This document shows positions 7,503 to 20,338 of a stretch of 64,000 bases of DNA, piece after piece (the first letter of the stretch is position 1; each line of letters starts with the position of its first letter). The stretch is from Zootoca vivipara. Its lineage: Eukaryota. The notes beneath the pieces were generated by a model. That model made no database searches and was not told the origin of the DNA. It was given only the letters and a program-made list of their open reading frames with translations. Where the stretch lies: the NCBI RefSeq assembly GCF_963506605.1, contig NC_083281.1, forward strand, positions 71,548,001-71,612,000. Direction: 5' to 3'. Both the position numbers and the translations under genes were made by a program.

Positions 7503-20338
<12,836 letters not shown>

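What the first reader, a model, noticed from the sequence alone, without database searches (positions are those of the whole stretch)
16009..16030. SLC7A9 copy A has lost the cationic-substrate aspartate: WAYDGW to WAYSGW (human D233 equivalent)
Seen: the codon at 16014-16016 (- strand) is AGT (Ser) in A, versus GAT (Asp) at 41536-41538 in B. This is a two-nucleotide change in an exon that otherwise differs by one silent base. Established: D233 in unwound TM6 is specific to b0,+AT among heteromeric light chains and is implicated in Arg/Lys/ornithine recognition. LAT1/2 have Gly and y+LAT/Asc-1 have Ser at this position (recalled). Inference: A is no longer a classical b0,+ carrier and has probably shifted toward neutral amino acids or altered cystine/Na+ behaviour, i.e. 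a new transporter born from a recent duplication.
Basis: partly seen in the sequence, partly recalled or inferred. Interest (0 to 1): 0.92.

Follow-up and report, generated by a model that had tools for sequence, protein, structure and literature searches.

The report
Lizard SLC7A9 duplicate lacking cation-binding aspartate
A lacertid lizard carries two tandem copies of the kidney/gut amino-acid exchanger gene SLC7A9, and one intact, fast-evolving copy, shared with Lacerta and Podarcis, has replaced the aspartate that binds arginine/lysine/ornithine with serine, a change already shown by mutagenesis to abolish ornithine (cationic amino acid) transport while sparing tyrosine, alanine and cystine.

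Summary
Copy A reads AGT (Ser) at 16016-16014 (- strand). Copy B reads GAT (Asp) at 41538-41536. This residue aligns with Asp233 of solved b0,+AT structures.

The window holds a head-to-tail tandem duplication of SLC7A9 in a lacertid lizard. Both copies have 12 intact coding exons (489 codons) and sound splice sites.

Copy A is not a private or very recent oddity. Annotated 'b(0,+)AT1-like' proteins of Lacerta agilis and three Podarcis species share Ser233. They also share V38L, E96D, P98S, K121M/L, A316S, G325S and A352V, and they form one clade (100/98). Among 130 other SLC7A9 proteins, position 233 is Asp in 129 and Glu in one.

Published mutagenesis of ovine b0,+AT shows what D233S does. 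Ornithine uptake is lost, while tyrosine, alanine and cystine uptake remain.

Copy A evolves several times faster than B (20 versus 1 derived residues; crude omega about 0.4-0.8). Even so, it has no indels or stop codons, and its replacements are more conservative than random.

Best reading (about 0.6): a retained paralogue that no longer carries cationic amino acids. The main rival (about 0.3) is a relaxed, decaying duplicate.

The parts
16014..16016 (-). Copy A codon AGT = Ser at the Asp233-equivalent position (unwound TM6)
41536..41538 (-). Copy B codon GAT = Asp233 (ancestral)
7503..20338 (-). Copy A gene, ATG to stop, 12 coding exons: 20338-20246, 19173-19026, 17866-17624, 16766-16641, 16108-16009, 14007-13963, 13006-12883, 12635-12532, 11715-11619, 11136-10987, 9598-9424, 7567-7506, then TAA 7505-7503. 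It has 489 codons. All introns are AG/GT except a GC donor after exon 1, which copy B shares.
34520..47169 (-). Copy B gene, 12 coding exons: 47169-47077, 44867-44720, 43547-43305, 42281-42156, 41630-41531, 40215-40171, 39173-39050, 38807-38704, 37645-37549, 36828-36679, 35589-35415, 34590-34529. The usual TAA is CAA here, so two more codons (Gln His) follow before TGA at 34522-34520.
17739..17741 (-). Copy A TTG = Leu at Lys121 (B: AAG at 43422-43420). The other A-types have Met, so the path was AAG > ATG > TTG.
17808..17816 (-). Copy A GAC..TCG = Asp96 and Ser98 in the SGGEYPY motif (B: GAA, CCG). Both are shared by all A-types.
12534..12563 (-). Copy A Ser316 (TCA, 12563-12561) and Ser325 (AGC, 12536-12534). 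Both are shared by all A-types. The same residues stand in LAT1, and Ser316 also stands in xCT.
11637..11639 (-). Copy A Val352 (GTG; B: GCG Ala), shared by all A-types
19147..19149 (-). Copy A Leu38 (CTC; B: GTC Val), shared by all A-types
17670..17672 (-). Cys144 (TGT), the cysteine that forms the disulfide with rBAT, kept in copy A (B: 43353-43351)
17578..17624 (-). End of exon 3 in copy A. The last exon base is T instead of G, both at the usual donor (17624) and at an in-frame alternative donor 45 nt downstream. The junction codon therefore reads TTT (Phe) instead of GTT (Val). Podarcis A-type isoforms show both donors in use.
1..24624 (.). Duplication unit holding copy A. It aligns collinearly with 26594-60536, the unit holding copy B, at 80-97% identity.

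Best explanation
Copy A is the window species' orthologue of a lacertid-specific SLC7A9 paralogue. It arose by tandem duplication before Lacerta and Podarcis separated. It is kept as an intact gene under weakened but real protein-level selection.

Its ancestor fixed D233S together with V38L, E96D, P98S, K121M, A316S, G325S and A352V. With Ser233 and Asn236 the unwound part of TM6 carries no negative charge. The protein should therefore no longer accept arginine, lysine or ornithine. It should still exchange neutral amino acids, and probably cystine, in a Na+-independent way, as the engineered D233S mutant does. It presumably still pairs with rBAT, because Cys144 and the C-terminal VPP are kept. 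Copy B remains the classical b0,+AT.

Shown: the sequence facts, the orthology, the asymmetry of rates and the intactness of the gene. Taken from the literature: the effect of D233S. Inferred: expression, pairing with rBAT and actual transport.
For: - The Ser codon and its alignment to Asp233.
- Both copies have 489 intact codons and sound splice sites.
- The same Ser, plus seven more shared derived residues, stands in Lacerta agilis and three Podarcis species.
- The A-types form one clade (support 100/98), with branches 5-8 times longer than the B-types.
- Among 130 other SLC7A9 proteins, D233 is 129 Asp and 1 Glu, E96 is 130/130, K121 is 128 Lys and 2 Arg, and P98 is 126/130.
- The D233S mutant loses ornithine uptake and keeps tyrosine, alanine and cystine uptake; D233A shows almost no arginine transport.
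- Signs of remaining constraint:
  - There are 0 indels in 1467 coding nt against 11 gap openings per kb in introns. That rate predicts about 16 for both copies, or about 8 for A alone.
  - No stop codon is present.
  - The 58 distinct A-type replacements are more conservative than random nonsynonymous changes (mean BLOSUM62 +0.24 against -0.46, P about 0.001). Only 2 of 58 gain a charge, against about 14% expected.
- Several shared changes copy residues native to other SLC7 carriers: Ser233 in y+LAT1; Ser316 in LAT1 and xCT; Ser325 in LAT1; Asp96 and an uncharged residue at 121 in Asc-1.
- The pocket and interface residues G45, S46, G47, S131, C144, W230, W235, N236, Q237, S379, W383, Y386 and VPP are kept.
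Against: - No evidence of expression was obtained.
- Copy A's crude omega is high. There are about 22 of the 26 nonsynonymous differences on the A lineage, against roughly half of the 19 synonymous ones. This gives about 0.75, and at least 0.4, which is not distinguishable from neutrality for this one lineage.
- A-type changes fall on conserved columns as often as random placement would (12 of 21, against 52% expected). Ordinary squamate orthologues put 0-2 of 57-81 differences on such columns.
- Window A alone adds C65S, F83S, T91P, T389N and A331V. A331V is listed among cystinuria patient variants in a review table (PMC12547869).
- L. agilis A has R333C.
- The conservativeness test is not significant for window A alone (P about 0.1).
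- The D233S mutant had a clearly lower Vmax.
Confidence: 0.6

Rival explanations
1. Copy A is a functionless or nearly functionless duplicate drifting towards pseudogene status. Loss of Asp233 and Lys121 disabled it early. Since then it has accumulated changes almost neutrally and has simply not yet been hit by a disabling mutation, at least in the window species.
For: The omega of the A lineage is about 0.4-0.8. A-derived changes are placed at random with respect to conservation. Each lineage adds its own hits at near-invariant sites: window F83S, C65S, T389N and A331V (a listed cystinuria variant), and L. agilis R333C. The last base of exon 3 is G>T, which weakens the donor. No expression data were obtained.
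Against: The reading frame is intact in five species. There are 0 indels in coding sequence against about 8 expected for A alone at the intron rate. There are no stop codons, where about 2.5 would be expected per 58 replacements. Replacements are significantly conservative and avoid new charges. All 22 splice sites are kept. Eight diagnostic residues are held fixed across Lacerta, Podarcis and the window species. Public annotation of Podarcis lists several isoforms of the A gene, which hints at transcript support; this was not verified here.
Confidence: 0.3
2. Copy A is kept not as a transporter but as a partner that binds rBAT, acting as a modulator or competitor of the classical b0,+ complex. 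Only the fold, Cys144 and the trafficking signals would then be constrained.
For: Cys144 and the C-terminal VPP are kept while many transport-related conserved sites are free to change. The frame is preserved.
Against: The TM1 GSG motif and the pocket residues W230, W235, N236, Q237, S379, W383 and Y386 are all kept, which such a role would not require. No precedent was checked.
Confidence: 0.06
3. The Ser codon is an assembly or sequencing error, or a collapsed or chimeric duplicate.
For: The window has one N run, at 30688-30880, in the copy B unit.
Against: The same Ser and the same accompanying changes stand in four other independently assembled lacertid genomes. It is a two-base change inside an otherwise clean exon. 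Contigs of runs from at least four studies of the same organism hold 50-82% of the sampled words of the copy A stretch. The two units differ throughout by about 5% plus many indels, so they are not a collapse.
Confidence: 0.01

Closest known systems
b0,+AT (SLC7A9), light chain of system b0,+ (solved with rBAT: 6li9, 6yup, 7nf6)
   Same: Same gene family by descent. Every exon of copy A has b0,+AT as its best PDB match (E from 1e-11 to 4e-36). Copy A has the same 12-coding-exon structure as copy B. It keeps Cys144, the TM1 GSG motif, W230, W235, N236, Q237, S379, W383, Y386 and the C-terminal VPP.
   Different: Asp233, the residue that meets the positive charge of Arg/Lys/Orn, is Ser. Lys121, Glu96 and Pro98, which are invariant or nearly so in 130 orthologues, are Leu/Met, Asp and Ser. 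Protein evolution is 5-8 times faster.
Engineered D233S mutant of ovine b0,+AT (Lee et al. 2022, PMC9110406)
   Same: Identical substitution at the identical position, with Asn236 unchanged. This is the best available predictor of function: no ornithine uptake, while tyrosine, alanine and cystine uptake remain. Tyrosine uptake in that assay series was Na+-independent.
   Different: The natural protein carries at least seven further fixed changes (TM1, the TM2-TM3 loop, the 121 region, 316/325, 352) that may compensate for the low Vmax of the single mutant or shift specificity further. It is a product of evolution, not of design.
y+LAT1/2 (SLC7A7/6)
   Same: Ser at the position of Asp233.
   Different: y+LATs carry Asp at the position of Asn236, which supplies the negative charge (PMC9110406). 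Copy A keeps Asn236. The D233S/N236D double mutant of b0,+AT transported nothing. Copy A is not a y+LAT by descent.
Neutral exchangers LAT1, LAT2 and Asc-1, and xCT
   Same: No negative charge in the unwound TM6. Ser316 and Ser325 as in LAT1. Asp96, and no charge at 121, as in Asc-1. Pro91 (window A only) as in xCT and Asc-1.
   Different: These carriers pair with 4F2hc and are distant paralogues (E 1e-17 to 1e-24 on exon 3, against 4e-36 for b0,+AT). LAT1 has Gly, not Ser, at position 233.
SLC7A9-like paralogues of caviomorph rodents (guinea pig P0121, chinchilla P0119)
   Same: These proteins also change residue 233 (Asn in guinea pig, Glu in chinchilla) and Pro98 (Ala, Ser). The guinea pig one is annotated '-like'. 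This may be a parallel.
   Different: Independent lineage. Lys/Arg121 is kept, and Glu233 in chinchilla keeps the charge. Not studied further here.

Membership tests
SLC7A9 / b0,+AT gene family (by descent) | Best sequence match of the exons is b0,+AT rather than other SLC7 light chains | tested here: met
   b0,+AT chains rank first on exons 3, 5 and 8 (E 4e-36, 1.4e-11, 1.3e-16). Other light chains are far weaker.
SLC7A9 / b0,+AT gene family (by descent) | Groups with SLC7A9 of related species in a tree; collinear exon structure with the neighbouring canonical copy | tested here: met
   the lacertid A- and B-types form one clade (100/100) inside squamate SLC7A9.
System b0,+ light chain (functional class) | Negative charge at Asp233 (or at 236) for recognition of cationic amino acids | tested here: not met
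   Ser233 and Asn236 in copy A. D233S/G/I abolish ornithine uptake.
System b0,+ light chain (functional class) | Cys144, which forms the disulfide with rBAT Cys114 | tested here: met
   TGT at 17672-17670. One search gives the role of Cys144.
System b0,+ light chain (functional class) | Unwound TM1 motif (residues 44-48, G-S-G) and pocket residues W230, W235, Q237, S379, W383, Y386 | tested here: met
   Exon peptides, numbered.
System b0,+ light chain (functional class) | Pairs with rBAT and exchanges cystine and dibasic amino acids for neutral ones | not testable with these tools
   Needs co-expression and uptake assays.
APC / LeuT-fold 12-TM permease | Predicted or solved 12-helix fold | tested here: inconclusive
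   the AlphaFold model of the L. agilis A-type from a 30-row alignment had mean pLDDT 39 and is unusable. The fold is inferred only from about 75-78% identity to solved b0,+AT.
y+LAT-type carrier | Ser at 233 together with Asp at 236 | tested here: not met
   Ser233 is present, but 236 is Asn (AAT at 14006-14004).
Processed or unitary pseudogene | Frameshift, premature stop, lost splice sites or loss of introns | tested here: not met
   489 open codons, with introns present and AG/GT at all junctions (one GC donor shared with B); no coding indels.
Processed or unitary pseudogene | Neutral rate and pattern of replacement (omega about 1, random kinds of residues) | tested here: inconclusive
   The crude omega of the A lineage is 0.4-0.8, and placement is random with respect to conservation. 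Yet the replacements pooled over A-types are conservative (P about 0.001).

The most novel reading that the evidence does not exclude
Lacertid lizards have evolved, from a tandem copy of SLC7A9, a new rBAT-linked exchanger that has switched off cationic substrates through D233S. Changes at Lys121 and at residues 316/325 would have retuned it, giving a neutral amino acid/cystine carrier ('b0-only') that works beside the classical b0,+AT in kidney or gut. This would be a natural replay of the engineered selectivity switch, perhaps paralleled independently in caviomorph rodents (D233N/E paralogues).
Probability: 0.4. Interest if true: 0.7.

Novelty: new variant of a known kind. Interest (0 to 1): 0.55.

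Why it matters
Which residues set substrate charge selectivity in heteromeric amino acid transporters is an active structural question. So far it rests on single engineered mutants, which have poor Vmax. This paralogue is a natural variant, kept in at least five species, that carries the D233S switch together with a defined small set of co-fixed changes (38, 96, 98, 121, 316, 325, 352). That gives a ready-made, testable set of candidate compensating or retuning residues. It is also a clean example of asymmetric divergence after tandem duplication of a disease gene (cystinuria type B). The gene models exist in public annotation only as '-like' entries. The open-access literature search found no description of them.

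Tried and rejected
- **Read laying.** There is therefore no read-level check of the codon and no expression data. No letters of 14691-14727 were sent to any search tool afterwards, and they were masked in the script.
- **The look-up of encoding contigs.** No codon-model dN/dS across species was possible.
- **The search of protein representatives with the 32-aa exon.** It returned mostly fragments. One of them, P0008, served to bootstrap the orthologue searches.
- **Structure prediction of the L. agilis A-type.** Mean pLDDT was 39. The model was discarded and no fold search was run.
- **Joined spliced model.** All searches and counts were done exon by exon on complete codons, and the seven split codons were read by eye.
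- **Readings rejected.**
  - Assembly error: the same Ser stands in four other species.
  - Pseudogene by disabling lesion: none was found.
  - Conversion to a y+LAT-like carrier: residue 236 stays Asn.
  - A very recent, species-private duplication: the A-types form a clade.
- **Literature searches.** Searches for a described lizard SLC7A9 duplication found nothing relevant.
- **The search of earlier findings by words.** It gave no lead on rBAT.

Full report
**1. The observation**

On the - strand, copy A reads TGG GCC TAT AGT GGA TG|gtaa, and copy B reads TGG GCC TAT GAT GGA TG|gtaa. The codon is AGT (Ser) at 16016-16014 in A and GAT (Asp) at 41538-41536 in B. The 100-nt exon (A 16108-16009, B 41630-41531) differs at three bases only: the two of this codon and one silent GGC/GGT.

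phmmer of the exon against all PDB chains puts b0,+AT first (6li9, 6yup, 7nf6; E about 1e-11) and aligns the Ser with Asp233. y+LAT1 shows Ser there, and the xCT consensus shows Val. LAT1 has Gly255 there according to PMC7159911. The residues of LAT2 and Asc-1 at this place were not checked.

**2. What the window holds**

A self-comparison shows a head-to-tail tandem duplication. Unit A (about 1-24624) is collinear with unit B (26594-60536) at 80-97% identity. With lizard SLC7A9 proteins as guides, both units contain a complete gene on the - strand. Each gene has 12 coding exons of identical lengths, totalling 1467 nt (489 codons). All acceptors are AG. All donors are GT except a GC donor after exon 1, which both copies share.

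Copy B's stop codon TAA is CAA, which adds two codons. In copy A the last base of exon 3 is T instead of G. This holds both at the usual donor and at an in-frame alternative donor 45 nt downstream, so the junction codon reads Phe instead of Val.

All searches were made exon by exon by reference, and all counts were made on the complete codons of each exon.

**3. Species and relatives**

The closest proteins are those of Lacerta agilis and Podarcis muralis. Window B is 98.1% identical to the L. agilis D-type protein P0149. The window therefore comes from a lacertid lizard.

L. agilis has a second annotated 'b(0,+)-type amino acid transporter 1-like' protein (P0150). So do P. muralis, P. raffonei and P. 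lilfordi (P0151, P0193-P0195). All of these read WAYSGW.

With the window's copy A they share eight derived residues (ovine/human numbering):
- V38L
- E96D
- P98S
- K121M (Leu in the window, by AAG > ATG > TTG)
- D233S
- A316S
- G325S
- A352V

.

Among 130 other SLC7A9 proteins of tetrapods, these positions are almost fixed: position 233 is Asp in 129 and Glu in 1, position 96 is Glu in all 130, position 121 is Lys in 128 and Arg in 2, and position 98 is Pro in 126.

In a maximum-likelihood tree of database proteins, the lacertid copies form one clade (100/100). Within it the Ser-types form one clade (100/98). Root-to-tip lengths from the duplication node are 0.05-0.08 for Ser-types against about 0.01 for Asp-types. 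The duplication and the Asp-to-Ser change therefore predate the Lacerta/Podarcis split, and the codon cannot be an assembly slip.

**4. How the two copies have evolved**

A and B differ at 46 of 1467 coding bases (19 synonymous, 26 nonsynonymous). This gives dS 0.057, dN 0.024 and omega 0.43.

There are 23 amino-acid differences in complete codons. Polarised with outgroups, 20 are derived in A, 1 is derived in B and 2 are ambiguous. Tajima's relative-rate test gives P = 3e-5. The L. agilis and P. muralis pairs show the same asymmetry: 21 against 4, and 29 against 2.

If the synonymous changes are split evenly between the lineages, the A lineage has omega about 0.75, and at least 0.4. B has about 0.05-0.1.

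A-derived changes hit columns that are at least 95% conserved as often as random placement would (12 of 21, where 52% is expected). Ordinary squamate orthologues put 0-2 of 57-81 differences on such columns. Constraint on the old b0,+AT function has therefore been largely lifted.

The copy is nevertheless not free:
- Introns of A and B differ by 4.6% and carry 11 gap openings per kb. The 1467 coding bases carry none, where about 16 would be expected for both copies, or about 8 for A alone.
- There is no stop codon in any of the five species.
- The 58 distinct A-type replacements, pooled over the five species, are more conservative than random nonsynonymous changes. Their mean BLOSUM62 is +0.24 against -0.46 (P about 0.001). 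Only 2 of 58 introduce a charge, against about 14% expected.
- For window A alone this test is not significant (P about 0.1).

**5. What the change should do**

According to PMC7159911, Asp233 contacts bound arginine and lines the second pocket, and D233A shows almost no arginine transport.

PMC9110406 tested D233S itself on ovine b0,+AT:
- Ornithine uptake is lost.
- Tyrosine uptake is kept, with a similar Km and a lower Vmax.
- Alanine uptake is little affected.
- Cystine uptake is preserved.
- Tyrosine uptake in this assay series was Na+-independent.
- The double mutant D233S/N236D transports nothing.

That paper also notes that every SLC7 system carrying cationic amino acids has a negative charge at 233 or 236. 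Copy A has Ser233 and Asn236, so by this rule it should not carry cationic amino acids.

Everything else listed as pocket or interface is kept: G45, S46, G47, S131, Cys144 (the disulfide to rBAT), W230, W235, Q237, S379, W383, Y386 and the C-terminal VPP.

Several of the co-fixed changes reproduce residues native to other light chains. Ser316 stands in LAT1 and xCT, and Ser325 stands in LAT1. Asp96 and an uncharged residue at 121 stand in Asc-1, and xCT has Arg at 121. This looks more like retuning than random damage, but it was seen only in a few pairwise alignments.

**6. Weighing the readings**

I put about 0.6 on a retained paralogue that has lost cationic substrates and still works as a neutral amino acid/cystine exchanger. 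I put about 0.3 on a relaxed, functionless copy on its way to decay.

The window species has the most worrying private changes: F83S, C65S, T91P, T389N and A331V. A331V is listed among cystinuria patient variants in a review table. L. agilis A has R333C.

A role limited to binding rBAT gets about 0.06, and an artefact about 0.01.

**7. What could not be done**

- The look-up of sequencing runs shows that contigs of runs from at least four studies of the same organism hold most sampled words of the copy A stretch. It also shows that three RNA runs of the species exist. None of these could be laid.
- The structure prediction was too poor to use.
- I met no contig that I took for human.
- The N run at 30688-30880 was left as it is.

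**8. Novelty**

The gene models exist in public annotation as '-like' entries. The searchable literature holds no description of a lizard SLC7A9 duplication or of a natural D233S. I class this as a new variant of a known kind. It is of moderate to good interest for transporter biology and depends on evidence of expression and transport.

Noticed in passing
window 54276-59194 (+ strand ORF 54755-58831): An LTR retrotransposon sits upstream of copy B, at the point that matches about 23050 in unit A. It has two 353-bp direct repeats (54276-54628 and 58842-59194, 99.7% identical) flanking one open 1358-aa ORF. The ORF has aspartyl protease (weak), reverse transcriptase, RNase H and integrase domains, so it is Ty3/gypsy-like. 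It is absent from unit A, so it inserted after the duplication and looks young. I only observed it.
   Followed up: partly
proteins P0121 (Cavia porcellus, '-like' isoform), P0119 (Chinchilla lanigera): Caviomorph rodents also have divergent SLC7A9 proteins with the 233 residue changed (WAYNGW in guinea pig, WAYEGW in chinchilla) and Pro98 changed (Ala, Ser). Chinchilla has Arg121. This may be an independent parallel to the lizard paralogue.
   Followed up: partly
window 17578-17624 (A) and 43259-43305 (B), - strand: An in-frame alternative donor lies 45 nt downstream of the exon 3 donor in both copies; it would add 15 residues ([15 protein letters not shown] in A). Podarcis annotation lists isoforms with and without this insert for both the Ser-type and the Asp-type gene. 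In window A both donors have T instead of G as the last exon base.
   Followed up: partly
window 20245-20246 / 47076-47077, - strand: The intron after the first coding exon starts with GC (GAG|GCAAGA) in both copies, so it is a GC-AG intron. This is consistent with the annotated lacertid proteins, which read ...LQKE|VGLL.
   Followed up: partly
window 34520-34528, - strand: Copy B has CAA where copy A has the stop codon TAA, and the Lacerta and Podarcis proteins end at that point. The B protein of this species is therefore two residues longer (..VPEQH).
   Followed up: no
window 13039-14647 vs 39256-40862, and 17000-17259 vs 42545-42811: Intron identity between the two units is uneven: 80-86% in these stretches against 93-97% elsewhere. 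This could reflect patchy gene conversion between the copies or repeat content. It was not analysed.
   Followed up: no
window 30688-30880: An assembly gap or masked run of 193 N lies downstream of copy B's last exon. It was left untouched.
   Followed up: no
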